DNA of 37,603 bases. Origin: Guillardia theta CCMP2712. Its lineage: Eukaryota > Protista > Cryptophyta. The stretch is from positions 90,616-128,218 of the forward strand of contig NW_005434633.1 in NCBI RefSeq assembly GCF_000315625.1. Direction: 5' to 3'. Of the stretch, positions 2,436-23,400 are shown piece by piece (positions within the stretch are counted from its first letter, which is position 1; the number at the start of each line of letters is the position of its first letter). The translations under genes were made by a program, and so were the position numbers. The notes under the pieces were generated by a model. It did not search any database, was not told the origin of the DNA, and saw nothing but the letters and a program-made list of their open reading frames with translations.

Positions 2436-4262
2436 CATCCTCATCATCCCTACTGAGTGCATCTCTCTCACCCTTGTTTCCGCAGTTGCAACTTGAATCC
2501 TTCCAACTCTGCAGGCGAGACGCCGCTGACCCTTGCAAGAAGCTGCCATGCCCTTTCCCTTGTGCGCGGCAAGGAGGCAGAAAACTACAAGAACATCGCT
2601 GCCATTCTAGAGCAGAACGGGGCGTCTGAGAGTCCTTCCTACATGACCATACGCACCAGGAACCCAGCTTCCTCCTCCTCCACCGACCACCACCATCGCC
2701 CTCCCTCCGCCTCCTCCTCTGCTCAGAAACACTCCAAGAAGAGGCCGGGGACCGCGACGGTGATGAAGGCAGCTATGAACTTGTTCTCAGTGTTCGACAA
2801 GAGCAAGGCGAAGAAGGAGGTGCTGAAACTGGAGGAGGAAGTGAAGGACCTGGACAAGGCTCGAGCTAAGCTTTCGAAGGCTGAGAAGGTCTTTCGCAGA
2901 ATTCTCTCCTCTATCCGTTCCTATGCTCCTCCCGTCCGCTTCCTCTCCTCTCCCTCCTCCTCCTCTCTCTCCTCTCTCACCTCCTCCCCCCCCATCTTGC
3001 CTCCCTCCCATGCTCTCCTCCCCTCTCCCCCTCCCTCCCTCCTGCTTCCCCTCCTTGACGGCTCTGCAGAAAGCCAACGAGGCGGCTGAAAAAGCCTCCA
3101 AGGCTCATCAGGAGCTGCTGGCCCGCGCCGAGCGTTTTGCTCCTCAGATCGAGCGAGTGAAGGAAACGATGAGGGCGATGAGAAACTTCGACGACGCCAA
3201 GTCGCTGCTAGCGGAAGCTAAGGCTCTGGAGAGGGAGGGAGCGCTGTCGAAGGAGGCGCTAGAGGCGTTTGCATGGCCCAAGGAAGAGCTGATGCTGCTG
3301 CAGAGCATAGTTGACGTACAGGTGAGAGAGGAGGGGAGAGATGGACCCTAAAATGATGTCATGTCATGTCATGTCATGTCATGTCATGTCATGTGCTCGA
3401 CATGGTATGATGTCATGTCATACATGCTTGTCCCCTCTCTCTCCTGCGCCTCCTGATTTTCCCTCGTGCAGAACGACTTGAACTCGTTGCTACGAGCCTG
3501 CCGCCACCTCGACGCCGAAGATGATCCGCACAGCAGCAACCTGCGAAAGAATCTCAAGTTTGCCATCAAGGTGATGCCGAGCAGGCGAAGTTTCGCTACT
3601 GAGATCTCCTCGTCTACCCTTTCCCCTCCTTCCGTCCTTCTCCTCCTCGATACTCCACCCTCTCCACCCTCCTCCTACCCTCCTTCCTTTTCCTCCCGCT
3701 TCTTCCTCCCACTCCTTCCTCCTCTTCCTCTTTCTCTTCCTTGCCAGACACTCTCCCCCTCCTCCTCCTCCTCCTCTCTTTCCACAGGAGCTCGTGGAAG
3801 TTCTGTTTCAGAAGACTCTCGAGGCAGAAGAGAAGCTCAGTGACACGTCACGCGGCAAGAAGGCCATCAAGAAGGACATCCAAGTCGCCTATGATCTGCT
3901 GGACAAGGCGCTCGATCTCCTCTGCTGCTTCATCTCCCTCATCTCATCTTGCCCCGTCGTTCCCCTTCCCCACATACTGTCCTCTCAACTCTCTTGCCCT
4001 CTCCTGTCCTGCTCTTCCCTTGTCCGCTACTCCTCCTACTTATCCTCCTCTACTTGTCCTCCTCCTTCTACCTCCGCTACCTGCTCATCTCTCCTCCTCC
4101 ACTTCTCCTCACTATCCTTCAGGAAAGTCTCTCCCTCAACATCGTTTCTCCATCATACGAGGAGTGCCAGGTGATCTCCGATCTTCTCCTTCCCCTCTGA
4201 CAAGTGCATGGCAGAGGAGGCTCAAACTTCTAGAAACCCAGTACGCGCATATTCTCTTCTAG
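242..4262 (+). CDS. Ankyrin-repeat protein with long charged coiled-coil region; multi-exon, 5' end probably upstream of 242 or outside the window
   Basis: Ankyrin consensus in ORF 247-2076 (RTALHVASTCGQKKAVRTLLRRGAEIDNKDAEGRTALVLA; GNSALLLSTVFGHEEAVDALIQSG) continuing after an intron (CNLNPSNSAGETPLTLA). Inferred exons ~242-2072, 2486-2889, 3070-3321, 3472-3570, 3789-3907, 4123-4170, 4215-4262 (ends ...YAHILF*). Confidence 0.8.
2198..2448. repeat. Compound intronic microsatellite (CCT)n followed by (CAT)n
   Basis: Directly visible tandem runs inside the 2073-2485 intron. Confidence 0.95.
3356..3393. repeat. (ATGTC)n pentanucleotide repeat, intronic
   Basis: About 7 tandem atgtc units, with degenerate copies to ~3425. 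Confidence 0.9.
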
Positions 4263-4322
4263 TCACAATGACATGTTGTATCATGATGAATGAATGTATA
4301 TTGTTCTTACCAGACCGTCTCG

Positions 4323-7300
4323 CTATCTCAAGCTCCACAGCATCACTAACAATGCCAGCAGTGCAGCGCACCCAGTCATCTCTCGTTGAGCAGCGCTAGT
4401 CTGGGAGCCGGCAGGCGTTGTCGCTATCGAGGTACCTTCACATGTCTCTCAGGTCAAGCACGTCAAACGACCAACAAGTCAAACTCACCGCTGACGTTGC
4501 AGATGTCAACATTGCAGTACTGACCCGTGTAGCAGGACTTACACTGACACAGCGCTTGACCTCCCAGCGTCTGGAAGTTGTACTGAGGTTCCTTGGGGAT
4601 ACACTGCATGCCGCAGTCTGGCCCCGTGTACCCGTTGGTGCACGTGCAAGTCCCGTCGTTCTCACAGTCGTAGAGCTCTGCGTCGCAGAACTGACAGGCC
4701 TGAGGGCAGTCGTTGGCAACGAGGGTACCCGGACATCCTGACTTGGTTGACGTCTCCGAAGTCTTCAACCCCACGCACGTGCCGTTGTTGTTCCACAGGC
4801 CCTGCCGAGCGAGCGAGTCGAGGTAGCTCTTACAGGTAGCTCGATCCCCGACTCGGTTCGACTTGTCGAAGGTCCCCCTGTTGCTGCACGGGCTCGCCGT
4901 CCCCCCGTTGCAGCGGATGTTGCAGTCCGGCCCTTTCCATCCCCTCCGGCAGTTGCAGAGACCGTCGTAGGTGAAGCCTGCTCCCACGCACTCCGTCGCC
5001 ACTACCGAGTGATGCAGCCCGGCGGCAACGAGCGACACAGGGCGCATTGCCTTGTTGTCCTTGGGCGGCAGCGTCTTGATGCTGTCTCCGAGCCCGTCCA
5101 AAGGGCTGACGTTGGGGGCCGGGAGCTCTGCGGCCTCGAAGTAGGGGACCTTGGTGGGAGCGTCGCTGAAGATATGATCGCCCTTTCCCAGCTCGCCGTA
5201 GTAGTTGGAACCCCACACCAGCAGCGTGCCGTCGCTCATGATCAGCAGGTTATGATCCTCCCTCGCCGTTACCTGGGTGGGCTTGGACACCATGGTGGAC
5301 CCCAAGAAGGGGAAGACGGAGGGCATGTAGGGGAGGAGGGGAATGGGCCTGTCGCTGTTGAGCCGGATGGGGAGAGGAGAGTCTGGGCACATGCGTTGGC
5401 TGGGGCTGTTGACGTTCTCACCTCCCGAGCAGTTGGTCCCCAGCTGACCCCTCACGTTGCTGCCCCACGTGTAGATCTCGCCATCCCTCGCGATGCAAGG
5501 GGTCGTTGAGAGGATGTCGGCGGACGCTCCCAGCATCGTGTTGCGACTCCTCGCCCCTCCGTCGCAGTCACAGTCAGCGCGAGAGAGCTTGAGCGTGCTG
5601 CAGAGCGAGGGCATTGGGCAGCTGGCGCAGGAGGCCGTGATGAGGACGTTGTGGAAGGAGCCAGAGACGAGGTCGAGGGGGCTGAACACCATCCCAGAAT
5701 CCCCTAGGGGATCAAACATGCTCAACTTCCGGGGGATGGACATGCAGCGCACGTTGGAGCCCGAGCAGGGGTCGTTAAGAACAGCAGCTTGTGGCCAGTT
5801 GCCCCGAGTCCCGGGCCCCTGCAGCGTCCAGGGGCACTTGACGTCTCCTGAGATGACGAGGCAGCCCAGCTGACCGAAGGAGTTGTCGCCCCACCCCCAC
5901 ACCTCGTGCGCCCCTGCGTCTCTCTGCACCACCACCAGCGAGTGATAGGCGCCAGCCGAGACCTTGACGGGCTTGAAGGTGCAGGGCAAGACTGCCGGCA
6001 GGGCGGCGCAGTTGGGGTCGATCTTACCACAGATGCATGGGTCCCCGTTCTGCGCCGAGGTGACGGCGCTCTGGAGGAAGCGAACCCTGGTGGGGGTCGT
6101 CCTAATCGAGAGATCGCCCTGCCCGAGCTGTCCCAGGTTGTTCGCCCCCCACGTGTACACGTCCCCTGACGTGGTGACGGCGATGCTGTGGTAGGCCCCC
6201 GCGTCAAAGTCGAGGATGACAACTCCGTCGAGGGACGTGATAAGGTTAGGAAGATCCTTGTTGACTGCGTCCCCCAGTCCCAGCTGGCTGTAGAGGTTGA
6301 ACCCGAACGTGTCCACCCCCCCGCTCTGACCGAAGTTCTGGAAGTTCCAACTCAGCACCTCGTGTACGCTGTATGCATCTCCCGTGGAGGAGGTGAAACC
6401 GATCCACGCTTTCCCGTCCTTGACGCACGAGTAGGCGAGGCAGGTGACTGTGTCCACGGCTCCTCCACAGACTGCCCCGCCGTCGCACTTGCATGCAGCT
6501 CCTTGCTTCGGGCCAGCGCTGCAGACGTAGGAGGAGATGTGAGATCGGAGGTCCAGGTCGTGTCTTATCTTGGGGCTCCTCGTGTCGTCCAGGAAGATTT
6601 CGATCACAAACGGGCGGTAGACGATGAGCAGCTGATGCATTGCCCCGTCCTTCACGTCCTCCATCTAATCCCACACGTCATGACTCGACCTCTGCCAGCA
6701 CACAACTTACAAAGCACGAGTTGACCGTTTGCAGCTGCGCGTCGGAGCAGCAAGTCTCAGGACGGTACACGTTGCAGGTGGATCGAGGCTTCCACTCGCC
6801 TGGAAGCTCATGACTTGTACTGGCACATCACACAGAAGCAAGGAGCTCACTCTGAACCAAGAAGCAGTTCTGTTGAGAGCCAGCAGTGATGGTCGTGTAG
6901 GGCGCGCCGTAACAACCTCGGACGTTGATCCCTCCCTTACCAGGCGCCGTCGAGATTTCAATACCAAAGGAGTTTGGGATTCCATCCGAAAGCGAAGTCT
7001 TGGTAGACCTCGCTATCCCAAGATCGCTGTCGAGGAAAGGCAAGACATCAGCGGACAGGCATGTCCTCCTTCCCTTGTCACCTTCCGGATCCTCCCAGCG
7101 GTCTCTCTTGCTCTTGTATGCCATGGTTCTGAATGGCAAACACTATCCCGTTGCCGCCCCCTGTCGGGTCGTTCTTGGAGATCGAGAAGAAGAACCCGCA
7201 CTGCCAAGCATCGTACACGTTGACCTTTTGCTGTTCCCACGTCAGGACAGACTGCCGGCGCTCAGCACTGGCTAGGAACCTTTCGCCATATCGCTCCGCT

Positions 7301-8636
7301 GGTTAGCCTAAGAGGAGGGTTTGGGGTAATGCTGAACAAGGCGAGGTCGCTGCATGGCGAAATCCACCAGTTGATGCCGATAGGAGCCTTCAGGGCGCTC
7401 GAGCAAGGCTGCCACGTCACAGTCAAGCAACAGGCTCGACCAGCTTCTGACAAGCACCTGAGCAGCAAACTGTCCGATCCAGCACCAGGTGTTGACAAGC
7501 TTGATGCCGTTGGCGGCAGCCCAGCTGGGGCTGTAGCACTGCCTTCCGCTGTAGGTCTGCTTGACGCCTGCAGGCACCGGCGTGCCTTCCCATGGGACGC
7601 ATCTGGGACAATCAGTCGCAGGGGCTATCGGCTGCGAAGCTTGTCCGTAGAAAACAAAGTCGTTCTGCGCGCCAGCAAACCCATCGTACTCGAAGAAGTC
7701 GACTGCCAGAACAGCGAGTAAGAGAGAAACTGCAAGCTCTGCCTCACCTGCCGAAGGAGGAGTCGTCAACACCGTGTGCTGGAAGCCCATCGCCAACTCA
7801 ACGATTGAGATCGGCTGAACCTCGTTCGGAAGAGTGTCGTTGTAATGCGCTCCCTGCGTCAGCAAGCCCGTCAAGCACACGCGTCGCTAGCACCTTTGAC
7901 GCGCGTCACCTGACCCAGCTGACCGTGATCGTCTCTCCCCCATGAGTAGAGGGTGTTTGGACCCTCCCACTGCAAGATGCAGGACTGAGCTCCACCTGCT
8001 CTTTCAGTCACCAACTGCCTCACCAGACTCTCCCGCATGTCACATCGAAGTTTGCTTATTCGCGCGTACACGGTTGACAAGGGCGTTGGCTCCTTCCTGT
8101 CGACATAATCTCCCACTCCTAGCTGAGCATAATTGTTGCGACCGAACGCCTGGGACAGAACTCAACAGCAGCTACATGGCGCACCGACAACTCACGTATG
8201 TGACCATCCCGTACTTGCAGAACTGATCGGGTACGCAATGTTGCGACGGAATCCTTGAAAGGAAGAGGTTGATAAGGTCAGCCAGCAGGAAGTTAGCTGA
8301 CCTCTTGGTCCCGTTGTCGTAGGTGACAGCAGACCACTCCTGCGAGGCCGGCGGAGGAGCTCCTTTGAGACTCGCTGAGTGGGGTAGGAGAGCAAGGAGG
8401 AGGGGTGGTACCAGTGAAACCGATCGGAACAGCATCGCACAGGTATGTGATGGGCGGCCTGCGGCAATGTTCATCTCCTCACTTTTCTCATGGCGTAAAG
8501 ACCTGCCGCAGACAGAGTTGGGGATCTTGAACCGTACCATGGCTGCTTCCTCCAGGTACAGAAGGCATACCAAGGCCACTTGGACCCAGCGTCGCTGCCC
8601 GCCAAGGCTTCCAGAGCAGGAAGCCATTGCGGGCAT
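4323..8636 (-). CDS. Secreted/cell-surface protein: signal peptide, 7 RCC1-like repeats interrupted by an L-type (legume) lectin-like domain, EGF-like repeats, GPI-anchor-like C-terminus
   Basis: N-terminal hydrophobic stretch (WVQVALVCLLYL); RCC1 motifs (AFGRNNYAQLG, YSWGRDDHGQLG, YTWGANNLGQLG, WGWGDNSFGQLG, YTWGSNVRGQLG, VWGSNYYGELG; AGAYHS); lectin-like motifs (FFEYDGF, FGIEIST, AWIGFTSSTGDAYSVHEVLSWNF); EGF-like CxCxxGxxGxxC; last exon after intron ~4437-4489 reads ...SQTSAAQREMTGCAALLALLVMLWSLR* (stop 4323-4325). Confidence 0.8.
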
Positions 8637-9374
8637 CAACTTTGAGCAGCAGCAAGACTACAGGAGACAAGAGATCAAGTTCATCCTGCAACTACATGCA
8701 GGCTGATGCCAGGGAGCGACCTGTCTGTCATGTCATGCCGTTTGCAATCAGAAGGTCCTCAGAGCTTCAAACTCGATGGAAATCGTGTCCTTGCACACTG
8801 TGACAACCAAGAATGAGCACAACATAGTTTTTTGATGATCGTCATCGTCATTGTTTCCACCACCTACTAATTTCATCAAAAATTCCATGCGAACCTATGA
8901 GGCCCGAAAAAGACACTTCCATCACTGTTCTGCTCTTTCTTCTTCTCACCTGCAAAGATTTTCTCTTCGCATGCATCATCTTCTCTCATCTCACTCCTCT
9001 CTTCTCCTCCTCCCAGCTCTCATCGTCTCCTCCCTCTCTTCCTCCTCCTCCTCTCAGCACTGGTCTCTACTCTCCGCCCTGGTCGTTGCCTCATCCTGCT
9101 CTACCCCAGGCTGGGACTGTACCCCCCTTCTTTACTGCAAACTGACCCCTCTTCCCCCTTTCATGAAACTGAGGGGGGCTCGAGAACTGTCCAGGAATCT
9201 CACCGATGCCGCACGGTCAGAACAAACTCACTGAGTCACCATTGGCTATCAAGTGCCGATCGGACCCGGCCGCTCACGGTCGGACTGACGGTCCGGGCCC
9301 GGCCATCATCGGCGAACTTGTTTTCCCCTTGAGTCCGGCGTATGCCAGGCCCGGGCCGCGGGCACCGGCGGGAG

Positions 9375-9416
9375 TCTCCTGATTGTCCTCGTACTGATTT
9401 TTAACTTAACTTTGAG
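9375..9416 (+). repeat. Copy 1 of a 42-nt direct repeat TCTCCTGATTGTCCTCGTACTGAT(T/C)TTTAACTTAACTTTGAG
   Basis: 41/42 identical to 9761-9802. Confidence 0.95.
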
Positions 9417-9760
9417 CCTAAAGGACGGAGGATTCAGTGGTCTCTTGGCCTCGCAAGACGTCTCAGGTGATCCGACTTGCAAACGCATCCGGTCCAGGAT
9501 CTTTCGTCAGCTCAAGGCCTCCCTGTCCTACGCTGCCATCATCGCCCGGGGTGCATCCCGGTATGCGTCTCATTCCTTCGGCGGCGGCCACTGCGACATC
9601 GCTGGCATGGCTGCGCGGGGGGATTGTCCAGCGCGCCGTTAAGTGAAGGTATCAGTTAAGTTTGGGGGCAGCAGTTGGCAGGATTGGGTTTGGTTCTCGC
9701 TGTCTTTTCTCTTCTCGCCGTTTGGCCTGTGCGACAGTGTCAGGGTCAAGCCTCCTCGAC
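9417..9760 (+). mobile_element. Possible 5'-truncated retroelement or retrocopy fragment between the 42-nt direct repeats
   Basis: 344 bp bracketed by near-identical direct repeats; carries an ORF remnant without ATG (to stop 9642; ...IFRQLKASLSYAAIIARGASRYA...) loosely resembling the C-terminus of CRE-like non-LTR ORFs; no poly(A) tail seen. Confidence 0.3.
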
Positions 9761-9802
9761 TCTCCTGATTGTCCTCGTACTGATCTTTAACTTAACTTTG
9801 AG
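9761..9802 (+). repeat. Copy 2 of the 42-nt direct repeat (spliced-leader-like, followed by TAAAAC)
   Basis: 41/42 identical to 9375-9416. Confidence 0.95.
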
Positions 9803-10313
9803 TAAAACTTGCAGTCAGTCAGTGACGACTCGGCGTCCGACCGTAACCAGTAACGGTCGCCCGGGAGCCGCTGGGTCTCAGTGAGTTGAGAAGCCGGCCG
9901 GGTCCCCGGCCCGGGCCGCCGAGCCTGTTAACTGAAAGGGGGTGGAGGGGGGGGGAGGGTTATTAAGGTACCGGTGTGATAGAGCCTTGTATCGCTACGA
10001 AGTACCGGGTGTACGAGGACACAACTGAATTGTGTGTTGTACGGGTTGTGCAATGGTTGCGGTTATTCCACAAAATGGTGGGCTGCAGGAGTTGGGAAGG
10101 TGGAGATGGAGATGGAGATGTTGATTGAAGAGTTGACATGATCCACATGAGGATCAGAATTGACATGAGGAACAGGACGTAGAAAGTGAAGTAGAGTGAT
10201 TGGGGAGAGAAATTTATGGTTTAATGACTGGGGAGAGACATTTATTGTTGATTAGCAAGGGGATACCGCCAATTACGTATGGCTTTTGTGACGGCGTGAT
10301 TGACATCAGGAAG

Positions 10314-10901
10314 ATGTCGGAGGAGGCTGCCAGCTCCAAGAGTCCCCATAGAGACGAGGGTGAAGAAGATCCCGTTCCGAGAAATGAGCTTGGGGGAGTA
10401 TACGGTCTGGGCTACTAGCATCTCCCTGTTCTGTTTGTGAATCATGACACAGTGGACGAGGAGGAGCTCAAAGCAGCCTTTGACTTCTTTGATGTGCACA
10501 AGAAAGGTGTTCTGACCCCTGCAGATCTGAAACAGAGGTGAGAGGGCATATGAACGACCCGCTCTGTGCTGACTGAGAGCAGATTGAGTGTATTCTACAA
10601 GAATCTCCCAGCACGAGAATACAAGTTTCTCATCAGTGAGCCCGATTTCACGTGAGTAAAGATGGGAGAAGCAGCAGGGGCAGGGGCGTAGGAAACAGCA
10701 AGGGCAGGGGCAGGGGCAGGGGCGGGGGTGGGGGCAAGAGGGAGGACATGAGTGATCGGATCGAAAGGGCTGATGTGTCATGCTAGGTTCAACACGCTGA
10801 AGAAGCTTCTGGTCAATAACGAGCTGAAAGATTTCGATCCAGTCAAGGAGGTGGGATAATGACGAGGATGATGATGATGAAGAAGAAGATGTTATGGAGA
10901 C

Positions 10902-10979
<78 letters not shown>

Positions 10980-11388
10980 ATGATTTACTTGAATCCTCCA
11001 ACACACTCACACGCTGGTGCTCACCAAGGCTTTCAAAGTATACGACCCGCATGAGACAGGATATGTCGACATCGAGGTACTTCGCTCCATCTTCATCAAG
11101 TAATGTCTAGTCTCTCTGCTCCTCCTTTCTTTCATGACACGTTGCAATCAATTAGCTTGGGGTTTGGAGAAGTGACCAACGAAGATGTTGCTGTTCTGAT
11201 AGAAACAGCAGATGTTGGTAAGGCAATCCTTGTATTTACTTCTCCCTGTATTGAGTACGATACCTCATGCAGATGGCGATGGCAAGATCAGCTTGGCTGA
11301 TTTCCGTAAGATGGTGACAAACTCAAAGAAAGTCGAGGCAGACTTGGAGTCACTACACAACTCGATACTCTCGGTCAAGAAGAAGTGA
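10314..11388 (+). CDS. Calmodulin/centrin-like EF-hand protein (about 7 exons)
   Basis: Spliced reading: MSEEAASSKS...|VDEEELKAAFDFFDVHKKGVLTPADLKQR|LSVFYKNLPAREYKFLISEPDFT|FNTLKKLLVNNELKDFDPVKE|AFKVYDPHETGYVDIEVLRSIFIK|LGFGEVTNEDVAVLIETADVD|GDGKISLADFRKMV...KKK*; EF-hand loops in the calmodulin pattern with GT-AG introns. Confidence 0.85.
10901..10982. repeat. (GAT)n intronic microsatellite
   Basis: Tandem gat run within an intron of the EF-hand gene. Confidence 0.95.
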
Positions 11389-19586: not shown

Positions 19587-22064
19587 ATGTCTTGCCTCAA
19601 ACAGCTCAAGGAAAAACTCTCACAGAGCGGGAGGAAGGAAGTCGGGGACTGCAGTCTGCTCGCAGCTGCATCCACCTTGCGGTCACCGGGGAAGGGCGTG
19701 TTTGCTCAGGCATACGAGCTAGCGCTGAAGAGCTGTATCCTTGCCCCCATGTTCTCTCGGTTTGATATCAGGGGAGGGAAGGTCTTCCCTTCGGACGACC
19801 TGTTCGACTGCCGAAAGCTTCGAACTTTTCTCTTCTCCGTGGATGCTGCCGACGTCCCGAGCTCCAACAACCATCCCTTCTCAGATTGGATGGACAGGCT
19901 GAAGGACTACACAGGTACACATGGTCTTTCCCCTGCCCCTCTCGTCCCTTGGATCGTGCACAGCGGTACAGTGCTACACTCGCTCTCGTGCTGCCTGGTG
20001 GGCGTCGAGATGTACTGGCACGCTCTGGCACATGCTGTGCAGGCTGAGCTGCAAGGGGCGAACTCTGTCAAGTTTGACAGGATCCTGAGGAAAATGAGCA
20101 GCGATGTGGAGGGAGCATGGCAGCAGGTGCTGTCCTGTGTCCGGCTGAACGCCGGTGACTGTCCCCCCGGAGGAGAGGTTGAGTACCATCCCGTCATCCT
20201 GCAAGCGGCAGCCAACGTGCTGCAGCGGGTGATTGTGCTGCTTGACATTCTTGCGAGCGATCAGGAGAAGAGGAGCAGGGAGCGAAGGTGGAGGGAGACA
20301 ATCTTCATACCATGGACGTGGGAAGGAGGGGGGAAGGAGGAGGGGGTCCAGAAGTTGCCTCCGCTGTTCATAGCATGGGAAGGGGAGGGCAGATGTATCC
20401 CTTTGACCCCCTCCGGCTGCGACAAGGCAACTTGCTTCTTCCCGGACCAGTTCTTCCCTCAGTCCGTCTTCTTCAGCCAGGAGAACTTAGCAGCCGTCAA
20501 GAGCAAGTGGCTCCCGCTCGACGGCAAGCAGAGAGCCCAGCTGTCTTCCAGCTCGTCCAAGTCCATGAAGTGGAGCCGGCTGCGAGCTCTTAACGACGTG
20601 ATGGGCGGGAAGTTCCATGAGTGCACTGGGCTGGCTCTGCAGACTGTCTGTGACTTCCAGGCGCTGCTGCTGGACCTCGATGTCCATTCCGTCTCCATCC
20701 TAGAGCTGCTGCAGGAGACGAGGAGGGCGCTGAAGGAGGAGAGGCTCTTCTACGATGGAGTCTCCTGCCAACTCACCCCCACCCGCGGCCTCTGGTCTCG
20801 CCAGGACCTGGCGAGAGGAGGGAAGCTGTACGAGTCTGCGATGCGGCTGCTCGCGATGACGGTGAGGCTCCATGGGCGCGAGACCCTCGATCCCTNNNNN
20901 NNNNNNNNNNNNNNNNNNNNNNNNNNNNNNNNNNNNNNNNNNNNNNNNNNNNNNNNNNNNNNNNNNNNNNNNNNNNNNNNNNNNNNNNNNNNNNNNNNNN
21001 NNNNNNNNNNNNNNNNNNNNNNNNNNNNNNNNNNNNNNNNNNNNNNNNNNNNNNNNNNNNNNNNNNNNNNNNNNNNNNNNNNNNNNNNNNNNNNNNNNNN
21101 NNNNNNNNNNNNNNNNNNNNNNNNNNNNNNNNNNNNNNNNNNNNNNNNNNNNNNNNNNNNNNNNNNNNNNNNNNNNNNNNNNNNNNNNNNNNNNNNNNNN
21201 NNNNNNNNNNNNNNNNNNNNNNNNNNNNNNNNNNNNNNNNNNNNNNNNNNNNNNNNNNNNNNNNNNNNNNNNNNNNNNNNNNNNNNNNNNNNNNNNNNNN
21301 NNNNNNNNNNNNNNNNNNNNNNNNNNNNNNNNNNNNNNNNNNNNNNNNNNNNNNNNNNNNNNNNNNNNNNNNNNNNNNNNNNNNNNNNNNNNNNNNNNNN
21401 NNNNNNNNNNNNNNNNNNNNNNNNNNNNNNNNNNNNNNNNNNNNNNNNNNNNNNNNNNNNNNNNNNNNNNNNNNNNNNNNNNNNNNNNNNNNNNNNNNNN
21501 NNNNNNNNNNNNNNNNNNNNNNNNNNNNNNNNNNNNNNNNNNNNNNNNNNNNNNNNNNNNNNNNNNNNNNNNNNNNNNNNNNNNNNNNNNNNNNNNNNNN
21601 NNNNNNNNNNNNNNNNNNNNNNNNNNNNNNNNNNNNNNNNNNNNNNNNNNNNNNNNNNNNNNNNNNNNNNNNNNNNNNNNNNNNNNNNNNNNNNNNNNNN
21701 NNNNNNNNNNNNNNNNNNNNNNNNNNNNNNNNNNNNNNNNNNNNNNNNNNNNNNNNNNNNNNNNNNNNNNNNNNNNNNNNNNNNNNNNNNNNNNNNNNNN
21801 NNNNNNNNNNNNNNNNNNNNNNNNNNNNNNNNNNNNNNNNNNNNNNNNNNNNNNNNNNNCTCGGCATCCTTGTCATGGTCATGTTAACAGGCGAATTCCA
21901 CATTGATGTGCAACAAGATTTGACTGAGAAGAGAACAAACATCGGCGTACAAGGTTCGTTCCTCTTCACCTCCCATCGCCATTCTCCCTCTTCCTCTTCC
22001 TCTTCCCTCTTTCTGCTACCTTGTCTTCACCTTCTCCACTAATACTACCACCACCACCTTTATC

Positions 22065-22118
<54 letters not shown>

Positions 22119-23400
22119 ACAACAACAACAACACCAAACTTCTCCTCCTCCTCCCTCGCCTCCTCCCCTCCTCTTTCCCTTCCTTCTTTCGTGAGCTCGC
22201 AAATGGCAGGAGCGGAGAACTATGCAGACGGCATTCTCCTCCCCGAGGAAAACCTGGAGAGGTTTGTATTTGTGGGTGGAGTCTTGAAGCCCAAAGAAAT
22301 TCCGCCATGTCGCATGAGAGGTGAAACGAGAAGTTTCTTCACCCTATCCTCTCCTTTCTCTCCCCTCCTTTCTCCCCCTCCTCTCTCCTCCCTCCTCTCT
22401 CCTCCTTCCTCTCCCTCCCCTCCCCTCCTTTCTCCTCTCCCTCCTCTCCCTCCTCCTCTCCTCTCCTCTCCTCTCCTCTCCTCTCCCCCTCCTCTCCCCT
22501 CCTTTCTTCTCTCCTCTCCTCTCCCCTCTCCCCTCTCCCCTGTCCCCTCCTCTTCCTCTGTCCTCCCTCCCTCATTTCTCTGCTATCTTGTATGTATTTA
22601 CGTCATCATCACTCTGAAGGAATCAAGGATGACATGCGGCCGGTTGACATTCATGGAGTACCTCAGTACCAGGATGGAGATTGCACGTTGAACAGCTCGG
22701 TGATGTAGCAAGCACGTTGAAATCATGACAAGTTTTCATCCTTCCTCCCCTCCCTCCCTCTCCTCCCTCTCCTCCTTCTCCTCCCTCCCTCCCTCCTTCT
22801 CATCGTTTTCTTCCAACAGGCTCCAGGGTCTTGCTGCGACCGCAAACACTGGTGGGCAGGAAGGCGAGACTGACTGCCGTCCCTCCATCTCCTCTGACAG
22901 TCACAGCAGGGAGTACGACAACTATCCCATCATTTTCCGATTATCCCTGAACTGCCCGACCCACTTCGAGCCATCGGGAAAGGTTTATCTCCTCCTCCTC
23001 CTCCTCCTCCTCNNNNNNNNNNNNNNNNNNNNNNNNNNNNNNNNNNNNNNNNNNNNNNNNNNNNNNNNNNNNNNNNNNNNNNNNNNNNNNNNNNNNNNNN
23101 NNNNNNNNNNNNNNNNNNNNNNNNNNNNNNNNNNNNNNNNNNNNNNNNNNNNNNNNNNNNNNNNNNNNNNNNNNNNNNNNNNNNNNNNNNNNNNNNNNNN
23201 NNNNNNNNNNNNNNNNNNNNNNNNNNNNNNNNNNNNNNNNNNNNNNNNNNNNNNNNNNNNNNNNNNNNNNNNNNNNNNNNNNNTCTTAGCAGGCTGTTGT
23301 CACCATCATATGGCACGAAGGCGAGTCGAACCCTCAGGTGTTCTTCTCTGACTCCCTTCCCTGCCTCCCATCTCCTCAGCTTGGACTCCTATCAGCTTTA
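19587..23400 (+). CDS. Hypothetical protein, multi-exon, interrupted by two assembly gaps; both ends uncertain
   Basis: At least 436 codons of non-repetitive open frame with coding-like composition (19587-20895); small GT/AG-bounded exons follow the gap (~21891-21953, 22210-22320, 22620-22699, 22820-22851, 22909-22982); no family recognised. Confidence 0.55.
20896..21859. other. Assembly gap (N run)
   Basis: Ns in sequence. Confidence 1.
22065..22135. repeat. (CAT)n(CAA)n intronic microsatellite
   Basis: Tandem runs visible. Confidence 0.95.
23013..23283. other. Assembly gap (N run) starting in a (CCT)n tract
   Basis: Ns in sequence. Confidence 1.

What the first reader, a model, noticed from the sequence alone, without database searches (positions are those of the whole stretch)
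9375..9802. 42-nt spliced-leader-like direct repeat bracketing a 344-bp insert: candidate SL-targeting retroelement relic or SL-capped retrocopy
Seen: two copies (41/42 identical) of TCTCCTGATTGTCCTCGTACTGATYTTTAACTTAACTTTGAG lie in the divergent intergenic region. They are AT-rich against GC-rich flanks. Copy 2 continues ...TTTGAGTAAAAC, resembling an exon|GTAA donor. Copy 1 is fused directly to an ATG-less open frame (…KRIRSRIFRQLKASLSYAAIIARGASRYA…stop 9642) followed by ~120 nt. An 11-nt inverted partial copy (GTACGAGGACA) lies at 10011-10021. Established: SL trans-splicing has been reported in cryptomonads; nematode SL1 ends TTTGAG|GTAAAC; CRE-clade non-LTR elements (SLACS, CRE1, CZAR) insert site-specifically in trypanosomatid SL genes with long target-site duplications; dinoflagellates carry SL-bearing retrocopies. 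Inference: either (a) the 42-mer is the SL exon, duplicated as a long TSD around a 5'-truncated site-specific retrotransposon, or (b) SL-capped cDNAs were reintegrated in tandem. I cannot confirm the SL identity from the sequence. No poly(A) tail and no clear downstream Sm site are visible.
Basis: partly seen in the sequence, partly recalled or inferred. Interest (0 to 1): 0.8.

Follow-up and report, generated by a model that had tools for sequence, protein, structure and literature searches.

The report
Retrotransposon tail, not a spliced leader
The repeated 42-mer is the 3' end of a high-copy R2-like jumping gene (a LINE with a restriction-like endonuclease) in the alga Guillardia theta, present here as two broken copies side by side, and it is not the organism's spliced leader, so the locus itself is ordinary.

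Summary
The direct repeat is real: 45 nt, 43/45 identical, at 9372-9416 and 9758-9802. It is not a spliced leader. The genome is Guillardia theta CCMP2712. Its published SL is a different 17-mer, which occurs 21 times followed by GT. An RNA contig shows that SL trans-spliced at window 10308, about 500 bp downstream of the finding. The 42-mer is the 3' terminus (...TTTGAG-TAAA) of a non-LTR retrotransposon of about 4.35 kb. The element has one 1350-aa ORF containing an RT, a CCHC motif and a restriction-like endonuclease (RLE) whose predicted fold best matches R2 proteins. The genome holds 1,198 exact 17-mer tails but only about 18 5' ends, so nearly all copies are 5'-truncated (median about 84 nt). 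Short TSDs of 6-10 nt follow the tail. In the window, 9372-9422 is a 51-nt stub copy, 9423-9437 is a spacer, and 9438-9806 is a 369-nt copy. Close pairs of copies are typical of the family: 66 tandem, 38 head-to-head and 15 tail-to-tail pairs within 400 nt, against 2-3 expected. The SL, long-TSD and SL-targeting ideas are refuted. The element is a new member of a known kind.

The parts
9372..9422 (+). Stub copy: the last ~49 nt of the retrotransposon (element positions 4281-4329) with a 2-nt CC insertion (9417-9418) before the TAAA tail (9419-9422). It carries the T variant at the polymorphic site (9399).
   Evidence: BLAST to the full-length element: 9372-9416 = element 4281-4325, 95.6%. The sequence read shows CC+TAAA+G.
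9423..9437 (.). 15-nt spacer between the two copies. It matches nothing else in the element and starts with G, as the genomic flanks of most copies do.
   Evidence: family homology starts at 9438. (G follows the A-run in 45 of 56 tails).
9438..9806 (+). 369-nt 5'-truncated copy of the retrotransposon (element positions 3963-4329, 95.7% identical to the intact copy in L065, up to 98% to other copies). It carries the C variant at 9785.
9439..9642 (+). The last 67 codons plus stop codon of the element's single ORF. It has one extra codon (R) relative to the intact copy.
   Evidence: 62/67 identical to the C-terminus of the 1350-aa ORF. table 4 (other copies lack 3 nt at 9546).
9643..9806 (+). The element's 3' UTR (~165 nt). 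It ends in the 45-nt repeated segment (9758-9802) and the TAAA tail (9803-9806). There is no poly(A).
   Evidence: Its fold is not significantly more stable than shuffles (z = -1.7).
10307..10316 (+). Context and positive control, not part of the element: the trans-splice acceptor (cAG, 10307-10309) of the downstream gene, followed by its ATG (10314-10316). The genuine G. theta SL is joined here in an RNA contig.
   Evidence: table 7 (run X3, loose end before 10308 reads ...CTCGGCGGCTGGTCA). The SL sequence is from PMC5619915.

Best explanation
The 42-mer is the 3'-terminal sequence of a young, high-copy non-LTR retrotransposon of Guillardia theta. The element is about 4.35 kb and has one 1350-aa ORF with a central reverse transcriptase, then a CCHC knuckle and a PD-(D/E)XK restriction-like endonuclease, which is the R2/CRE/NeSL-type layout. 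It ends in ...TTTGAG-TAAA(A) without poly(A).

[quoted passage not shown] The endonuclease nicks the target with only weak sequence preference: TSDs mostly start with GA, just after the tail. The nick primes cDNA synthesis from the RNA's 3' end. Synthesis usually aborts early, so almost all copies are 3'-terminal fragments that share the tail.

The window holds two such fragments in the same orientation, 15 nt apart: a 51-nt stub (9372-9422) and a 369-nt copy (9438-9806). That arrangement produces the apparent '42-nt direct repeat bracketing an insert'. The pair most likely arose by two successive insertions, because new copies land next to old ones far more often than chance. A single compound event with template switching is the main alternative.

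Shown: the family anatomy, protein domains, TSDs, clustering, and the fact that the 42-mer is not the SL. Inferred: the TPRT mechanism (from the family's known biology), the weak T|GA nick preference, and the order of the two insertions.
For: - Family: 614 hits to the 35-mer core and 1,198 exact 17-mer tails, against 0-1 for reversed-pattern controls.
- The 3' end is constant and the 5' ends vary. 29 of 30 unbiased copies are shorter than 235 nt, and the median is 84 nt. Only about 18 loci hold the 5' end.
- Two copies share 4,330 nt at 98% identity. One carries an intact 1350-aa ORF.
- RVT_1 matches at aa 594-737. The best PDB sequence hit is the R2Bm RT, 8gh6.
- CCHC (C1112, C1115, H1127, C1131) and D1186 are invariant, with a conserved D/E and a downstream K.
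- The AF2 model of aa 1085-1320 gives R2 proteins as its top six PDB hits, followed by Prp8 and viral PD-(D/E)XK nucleases.
- TSDs of at least 6 nt occur in 14 of 52 copies, against 2.0 in the re-paired control.
- The window's frame equals the ORF's C-terminus.
- Clustering within 400 nt: 66 tandem, 38 head-to-head and 15 tail-to-tail pairs, against about 3.3, 1.65 and 1.65 expected.
- TSDs around single members of compound loci (L005, L018, L049) show successive insertion.
- Not the SL.
Against: - Neither window copy has a convincing TSD of its own, so the order and number of events at this locus is not shown.
- RLE-type elements are usually strictly site-specific (PMC4640811), whereas this family is dispersed.
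- No N-terminal zinc finger or Myb domain was detected.
- RT motif C reads YADN rather than YADD, which is unexpected for an active RT.
- The RLE fold match is moderate (model pLDDT 71, TM 0.48), and the alignment behind it has only four sequences.
- The clade within the RLE group was not determined.
Confidence: 0.93

Rival explanations
1. Same element, different history: the stub and the 369-nt copy were laid down in one compound TPRT event. On reaching the broken 5' end of the first RNA, the RT switched to the 3' end of a second RNA, copied about 50 nt and then joined the target. R2 RT is known to make such template jumps in vitro (from my own knowledge).
For: Head-to-tail pairs are about 20-fold over-represented, and many junctions have spacers of only 0-10 nt. 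Fused head-to-head stubs with 0-10-nt spacers look like twin priming within one event. Neither window copy has its own clear TSD.
Against: The 15-nt spacer is long for untemplated addition, and it starts with G as ordinary genomic flanks do. The two copies differ at the T/C subfamily site, and only copy 1 has the CC insertion. In three compound loci the TSDs bracket one member only, which shows successive insertions.
Confidence: 0.33
2. One reading: the 42-mer is the spliced-leader exon with a GTAA donor. It is either duplicated as a long TSD around an SL-gene-specific retrotransposon, or it marks SL-capped cDNAs that reintegrated in tandem.
For: TTTGA|GTAAA looks like a 5' splice site. The element is of the RLE type, as are CRE, SLACS and NeSL, which do target SL genes (PMC4640811).
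Against: - The G. theta SL is a different 17-mer. It occurs 21 times in this genome and is seen trans-spliced at 10308 in this window.
- The sequence after TAAA(G) is unique at every locus, with no conserved intron or Sm site.
- The 42-mer follows a common body rather than preceding varied mRNAs.
- Truncation points run straight through the 42-mer, so it is not a discrete unit.
- Full-length copies have no upstream 42-mer.
- No RNA read or contig is joined at the putative donor, and loose ends after 9416 continue with TAAA.
- The SL loci lack the element.
Confidence: 0.01
3. The 42-mer is the terminal repeat of another class of element: a Penelope-like pseudo-LTR, an LTR/TRIM, or the terminal inverted repeat of a MITE or DNA transposon.
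For: Partial head-to-tail tandems resemble Penelope pLTRs. Inverted pairs of the 42-mer exist.
Against: - Full-length copies carry the sequence only at the 3' end, with no 5' copy, direct or inverted.
- Pfam finds no GIY-YIG domain, integrase or transposase.
- The C-terminal domain folds like the R2 endonuclease.
- Rfam finds no hammerhead in 8500-11000.
- Inverted pairs enclose varied element 3' fragments and unique DNA rather than a shared internal sequence.
- TSD length varies from 6 to 10 nt.
Confidence: 0.02
4. A simple local segmental duplication of a 386-bp unit, unrelated to transposition.
For: There are two direct copies 386 bp apart.
Against: Only the 45 nt are shared, not a 386-bp unit. 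Both pieces belong to a family with about 1,200 copies. The copies carry different subfamily variants.
Confidence: 0.01

Closest known systems
R2 non-LTR retrotransposons (R2Bm, R2Tg; PDB 8gh6, 9dou, 9nl3)
   Same: A single ORF with RT, then CCHC, then a C-terminal PD-(D/E)XK restriction-like endonuclease. R2 gives the best PDB sequence hit for the RT and the top six structural hits for the C-terminal domain. Like R2, the element has no poly(A) tail and frequent 5' truncation, and it presumably uses TPRT primed at the RNA 3' end.
   Different: R2 inserts at one site in 28S rDNA and has N-terminal zinc-finger/Myb DNA-binding domains. The G. theta family is dispersed at over 1,000 unique sites with only a weak T|GA preference. 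No N-terminal ZF or Myb domain was detected. RT motif C reads YADN. Sequence identity is only about 12% in the endonuclease region.
CRE1/CRE2/SLACS/CZAR and NeSL-1 (SL-gene-specific RLE retrotransposons)
   Same: The same supergroup architecture: RT plus an RLE at the C-terminus. One distant sequence relative (P0005) carries a Ulp1 protease domain, as NeSL and some Utopia elements do (PMC4640811).
   Different: Those elements sit inside SL exons. This one does not: six of the 21 genuine SL loci hold no copy except one 25-nt stub. TSDs are 6-10 nt, not tens of nt. In P0005 the protease is C-terminal, whereas in NeSL it is N-terminal. Clade membership was not tested by phylogeny.
Guillardia theta spliced-leader RNA genes (Roy 2017, PMC5619915)
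   Same: A short, multi-copy sequence followed by GT.
   Different: The real SL is a 17-nt sequence in about 20 invariant copies, with a conserved 23-nt intron start and a U-rich Sm-like motif, and it is found on mRNAs. The 42-mer has about 1,200 copies, is preceded by the retrotransposon body, is followed by unique DNA, and is not joined to any mRNA in the data examined.
L1-type 5' truncation, twin priming and template switching
   Same: Extreme 5' truncation, short variable TSDs, fused head-to-head fragments with tails pointing outward (as in twin priming), and head-to-tail compound copies.
   Different: L1 uses an APE endonuclease and a poly(A) tail. This element uses an RLE and a fixed non-A tail. 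Copies are far shorter (median about 84 nt), and about 20% of tails lie within 400 nt of another tail.

Membership tests
Spliced-leader RNA gene / SL exon | The sequence is found at the 5' ends of many unrelated mRNAs, joined at AG acceptors | tested here: not met
   The published G. theta SL is a different 17-mer, and it is seen joined at window 10308. No joint occurs at the 42-mer's 3' end. Contigs and reads that run past it continue with TAAA plus mixed flanks. This rests on four runs, not an exhaustive 5'-end survey.
Spliced-leader RNA gene / SL exon | The exon is followed by a GT donor and a conserved intron segment with an Sm-binding site | tested here: not met
   Homology among 69 distinct tails ends at TGAGTA+A(2-4). 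From the second base after the A-run the flank composition is near random.
Spliced-leader RNA gene / SL exon | A discrete unit with its own 5' boundary (transcription start) | tested here: not met
   Upstream sequence is the retrotransposon body in most copies. Truncation points form a continuum that also falls inside the 42-mer.
Non-LTR retrotransposon (LINE) | Encodes a reverse transcriptase | tested here: met
   RVT_1 E = 6e-8, above the gathering cut-off. Aligns to the R2Bm RT.
Non-LTR retrotransposon (LINE) | Constant 3' end, variable 5' truncation, no terminal repeats on full-length copies | tested here: met
Non-LTR retrotransposon (LINE) | Variable short target-site duplications that flank individual copies | tested here: met
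   14 of 52 copies have a junction match of at least 6 nt, against 2.0 in the re-paired control. The rest have none or shorter ones.
RLE-bearing group (R2/R4/CRE/NeSL/HERO/Utopia) | A CCHC zinc knuckle plus a PD-(D/E)XK restriction-like endonuclease C-terminal to the RT | tested here: met
   Invariant C1112, C1115, H1127, C1131 and D1186, with a conserved D/E and a downstream K. The AF2 model's top six PDB hits are R2 proteins (E from 9e-5 to 5e-3), followed by Prp8 and bunyaviral endonucleases. Model confidence is moderate (pLDDT 71).
RLE-bearing group (R2/R4/CRE/NeSL/HERO/Utopia) | N-terminal zinc-finger/Myb DNA-binding motifs | tested here: not met
   Pfam finds nothing in aa 1-480 at E <= 0.1. 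No C2H2-like spacing is visible in the translation. Divergent motifs could be missed.
SL-gene-specific elements (CRE/SLACS/CZAR/NeSL-1) | Site-specific insertion within SL genes | tested here: not met
   Six genuine SL loci of 3 kb each hold no copy except a 25-nt stub in L072. Flanks of more than 60 copies are unique.
SL-gene-specific elements (CRE/SLACS/CZAR/NeSL-1) | RT phylogeny places the element inside the CRE or NeSL clade | not testable with these tools
   No reference set of clade RT sequences (Repbase/RTclass1) was available. Only four relatives were found.
Penelope-like elements | GIY-YIG endonuclease, pLTRs and hammerhead ribozymes | tested here: not met
   No GIY-YIG domain. The endonuclease is R2-like. 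No Rfam hammerhead in 8500-11000. Full-length copies lack an upstream repeat.

The most novel reading that the evidence does not exclude
This may be an RLE (R2-supergroup) LINE that has lost strict site specificity and N-terminal DNA-binding fingers. It runs on an RT whose catalytic box reads YADN instead of YADD. It preferentially re-inserts at or beside its own earlier copies, so that about 20% of its roughly 1,200 tails sit in compound clusters. If that self-homing is real, guided by RNA-DNA or protein-DNA recognition of its own tail, it would be an unusual targeting mode for this group and a compact natural system for studying abortive TPRT and target choice.
Probability: 0.2. Interest if true: 0.45.

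Novelty: new member of a known kind. Interest (0 to 1): 0.22.

Why it matters
For the finding as posed, the result is negative. There is no second spliced leader in G. theta and no SL-targeting element, so the locus is an ordinary pair of LINE fragments in an intergenic region. This 42-mer recurs about 1,200 times in the genome and will keep being flagged, so the result is useful for annotation.

The family itself has some value for transposon biology. RLE-type LINEs are reported to be mostly site-specific (PMC4640811), whereas this one is abundant, dispersed and recently active, with copies 98-99.7% identical and one intact ORF. It shows extreme 5' truncation, strong clustering of copies and a conserved YADN RT motif. 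The searchable literature has no description of it, and I could not check Repbase.

Tried and rejected
- Rfam scan of 8500-11000 at E <= 1 gave only sub-threshold chance hits, with no SL RNA, hammerhead or snRNA.
- The SL hypothesis is rejected.
- The long-TSD hypothesis is rejected: full-length copies have no upstream 42-mer.
- The apparent truncation hot spot at the start of the 42-mer is largely an artefact of my 35-mer probe, which cannot detect shorter copies. Shorter stubs of 19-33 nt do exist.
- The tail is not more conserved than the element body (0.95-0.99 against 0.93-1.0), so there is no sign of separate constraint on it.
- The 3' UTR fold has z = -1.7, which is not significant. The predicted closing stem between the stop-codon region and the tail is only a lead.
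- The 11-nt inverted match at 10011-10021 is at chance level.
- The 7-nt identity (GGTCAAG, 9744-9750) between the element's 3' UTR and the real SL's 3' end is too short to mean anything.
- TIR/MITE, Penelope-like and segmental-duplication readings are rejected (see rivals).
- The search of earlier findings returned nothing.
- Literature searches for this family in Guillardia returned nothing.
- The atlas search gave only generic RVT_1 clusters scoring below 0.9.
The number of intact copies and the exact 5' end (about 13-26 nt upstream of my first boundary) therefore remain approximate.
- The big representative-protein search and complex prediction were not used, because they were not needed for the claim.

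Full report
**1. The observation**

Window 9372-9416 and 9758-9802 hold a 45-nt direct repeat (43/45 identical). No match appeared in 100 shuffles of the window.

Two details need correcting. First, copy 1 is followed by CC, then TAAA (9419-9422) and a 15-nt spacer before the downstream homology starts at 9438. It is therefore not fused directly to the open frame. Second, the 11-nt inverted match at 10011-10021 has no matching flanks, and BLAST of the window against the full element does not recover it.

**2. The organism and its real spliced leader**

The window is contig 41 of an 87.1-Mb, 669-contig genome. A protein fragment of the element is 100% identical to GUITHDRAFT_110080 of Guillardia theta CCMP2712.

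Roy (2017, PMC5619915) showed that G. theta uses a 17-nt SL, CTCGGCGGCTGGTCAAG. It is encoded by about 20 invariant genes that have a conserved intron start and an Sm-like motif. I found 21 exact copies of this SL followed by GT in the genome.

When RNA-derived contigs were laid on window 8900-10400, one contig of run X3 carried ...CTCGGCGGCTGGTCA joined at window 10308. This is the acceptor cAG at 10307-10309, with an ATG at 10314. The genuine SL is therefore used about 500 bp downstream of the finding, and it is unrelated to the 42-mer.

**3. What the 42-mer is**

- The 35-nt core occurs 614 times in the genome with up to 3 mismatches. The exact 17-mer TTTAACTTAACTTTGAG occurs 1,198 times. 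Reversed-pattern controls gave 0-1.
- A search with window 9300-9900 showed a dispersed family. Its matches all end at window 9806-9811 but begin at many different points. This is the signature of 5'-truncated LINE copies.
- Some copies extend at least 1.8 kb further upstream than the window's copy. Two copies, in L062 (reverse strand) and L065, share 4,330 nt at 98% identity.
- The L065 copy has one intact ORF of 1350 aa. Only about 18 loci hold the element's 5' end, so roughly 1-2% of copies are full length.
- Full-length copies have no 42-mer at their 5' side.
- In an unbiased sample of 30 tails, 29 copies are shorter than 235 nt. Over 52 copies the median length is 84 nt.
- Truncation points also fall inside the 42-mer, giving stubs of 19-33 nt. 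The 42-mer is therefore not a discrete unit. Its apparent boundary in the window is simply the length of the upstream stub.
- The tail reads TGAGTA followed by 2-4 further A's, and a G follows in 45 of 56 cases. After that the flanks are unique.
- The tail is no better conserved than the element body.

**4. The protein**

Pfam finds RVT_1 at aa 594-737. The only PDB sequence match is the Bombyx R2 RT, 8gh6.

Alignment with three distant relatives shows an invariant CCHC motif (C1112, C1115, H1127, C1131). It is followed by an invariant D1186, a conserved D/E and a downstream K. This is the layout of the restriction-like endonuclease (RLE) of R2/CRE/NeSL-type elements.

An AlphaFold model of aa 1085-1320 (pLDDT 71) has R2 proteins from zebra finch, silkworm and turtle as its top six PDB matches, at E from 9e-5 to 5e-3. 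Prp8 and bunyaviral PD-(D/E)XK endonucleases follow.

No APE, GIY-YIG, integrase or N-terminal zinc-finger domain was detected. One distant relative (P0005) carries a Ulp1 protease domain, which recalls NeSL and Utopia elements (PMC4640811).

RT motif C reads YADN in all three independent G. theta copies and in the 33%-identical relative.

**5. Integration features**

Junction matches of at least 6 nt (TSDs) occur in 14 of 52 copies, against 2.0 expected when flanks are re-paired. They begin right after the TAAA tail, usually with GA, and the base before the TSD is often T. This fits TPRT with a weakly specific nick.

The element does not target SL genes. Six SL loci hold no copy apart from one 25-nt stub.

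Copies cluster strongly. Expectations were computed from the 1,198 tails in 87.1 Mb.

| Pair type (gap ≤400 nt) | Observed | Expected |
|---|---|---|
| Same-strand tandem | 66 | about 3.3 |
| Head-to-head | 38 | about 1.65 |
| Tail-to-tail | 15 | about 1.65 |

Many head-to-head stubs are fused with spacers of 0-10 nt, which resembles twin priming. In L005, L018 and L049 a TSD brackets only one member of a compound locus. That shows a newer copy inserted at the edge of an older one.

**6. The window locus**

- 9372-9422 is a 51-nt stub, matching element positions 4281-4329. It carries the T variant and a CC insertion before the TAAA tail.
- 9423-9437 is a spacer.
- 9438-9806 is a 369-nt copy, matching element positions 3963-4329 at 95.7% identity to L065. 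It carries the C variant.
The frame's upstream extension through the stub is fortuitous.
- RNA reads and contigs cover only the element-derived parts and mostly carry other copies' variants. The unique flanks (9053-9358 and 9818-9970) have no coverage. No joint occurs at TTTGA|GTAAA. Loose ends after 9416 continue with TAAA and then mixed sequence, as expected from read-through of other genomic copies.

I favour two successive insertions at this locus. The spacer begins with G as genomic flanks do. The two copies carry different subfamily variants. Successive insertion is shown directly at three other compound loci. A single event with template switching remains possible, at roughly one chance in three, because neither copy shows a clean TSD.

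**7. Comparison and novelty**

The element works like, and by domain order and fold belongs with, the RLE-bearing non-LTR retrotransposons. These elements are reported to be mostly site-specific (PMC4640811), whereas this family is dispersed and shows no detectable N-terminal DNA-binding motif. Its clade (CRE, NeSL/Utopia, R2, R4, HERO or new) could not be determined without reference RT sets.

I found no description of the family in the searchable literature, and Repbase could not be consulted. I rate it a new member of a known kind. As an explanation of the flagged repeat it is ordinary.

**8. Limits**

- The RNA evidence comes from four runs only.
- The RLE model rests on a four-sequence alignment.

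Noticed in passing
window 10307-10316: This is the trans-splice acceptor (cAG) of the downstream + strand gene, with its ATG at 10314. An RNA contig of run X3 carries the genuine G. theta SL joined here. Contigs of runs X1 and X2 start further upstream (10016 and 10054) without it, which suggests alternative or unprocessed 5' ends.
   Followed up: partly
L065:7763-7777 (aa 695-699 of the ORF); also L062, L074, L075: RT motif C reads YADN instead of the canonical YADD. This holds in all three independent G. theta copies examined and in the 33%-identical relative from an unrelated SRA assembly. The family is clearly recently active, so this RT tolerates Asn at the second catalytic-box position.
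   Followed up: partly
G000:C269:41975-42283; G000:C35:508505-508643; G000:C56:2595-2836: Short stubs of the element together with their flank have been amplified into small tandem arrays, for example a 64-nt unit repeated at least 4 times and a 34-nt unit repeated 3 times. LINE stubs therefore seed minisatellites in this genome.
   Followed up: no
window 20896-21859 and 23013-23283: Runs of N (assembly gaps). They explain the GC dip in the composition profile.
   Followed up: yes
window 10894-10980: A long (GAT)n/(ATG)n trinucleotide repeat lies inside the transcribed region downstream of the SL acceptor. If it is in frame with the ATG at 10314 and no intron intervenes, it would encode a poly-Asp tract.
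   Followed up: no
L074 (ENA metagenome assembly ERZ930064, 4,042-nt contig): A contig from a metagenome assembly carries a copy of the element that is 99% identical. It is preceded by a 3' fragment of another copy. G. theta, or a very close relative, is therefore present in that sample.
   Followed up: no
L075 (Logan SRR22388310 contig, 4,961 nt): The closest non-Guillardia relative (33% identity, 1511 aa, same RT-CCHC-RLE order) has an unrelated 3' end that runs into a (TG)n microsatellite. It may be a microsatellite-targeting member of the same lineage.
   Followed up: no
L065:9731-9898 (the element's 3' UTR): The predicted fold pairs the region just after the stop codon (GTTAAGTGAAGGTATCAGT) with part of the 42-mer (ACTGATCTTTAACTTAA), which closes the whole 3' UTR. 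The overall z-score is only -1.7. This could be the RNA handle recognised by the protein, but covariation was not tested.
   Followed up: partly
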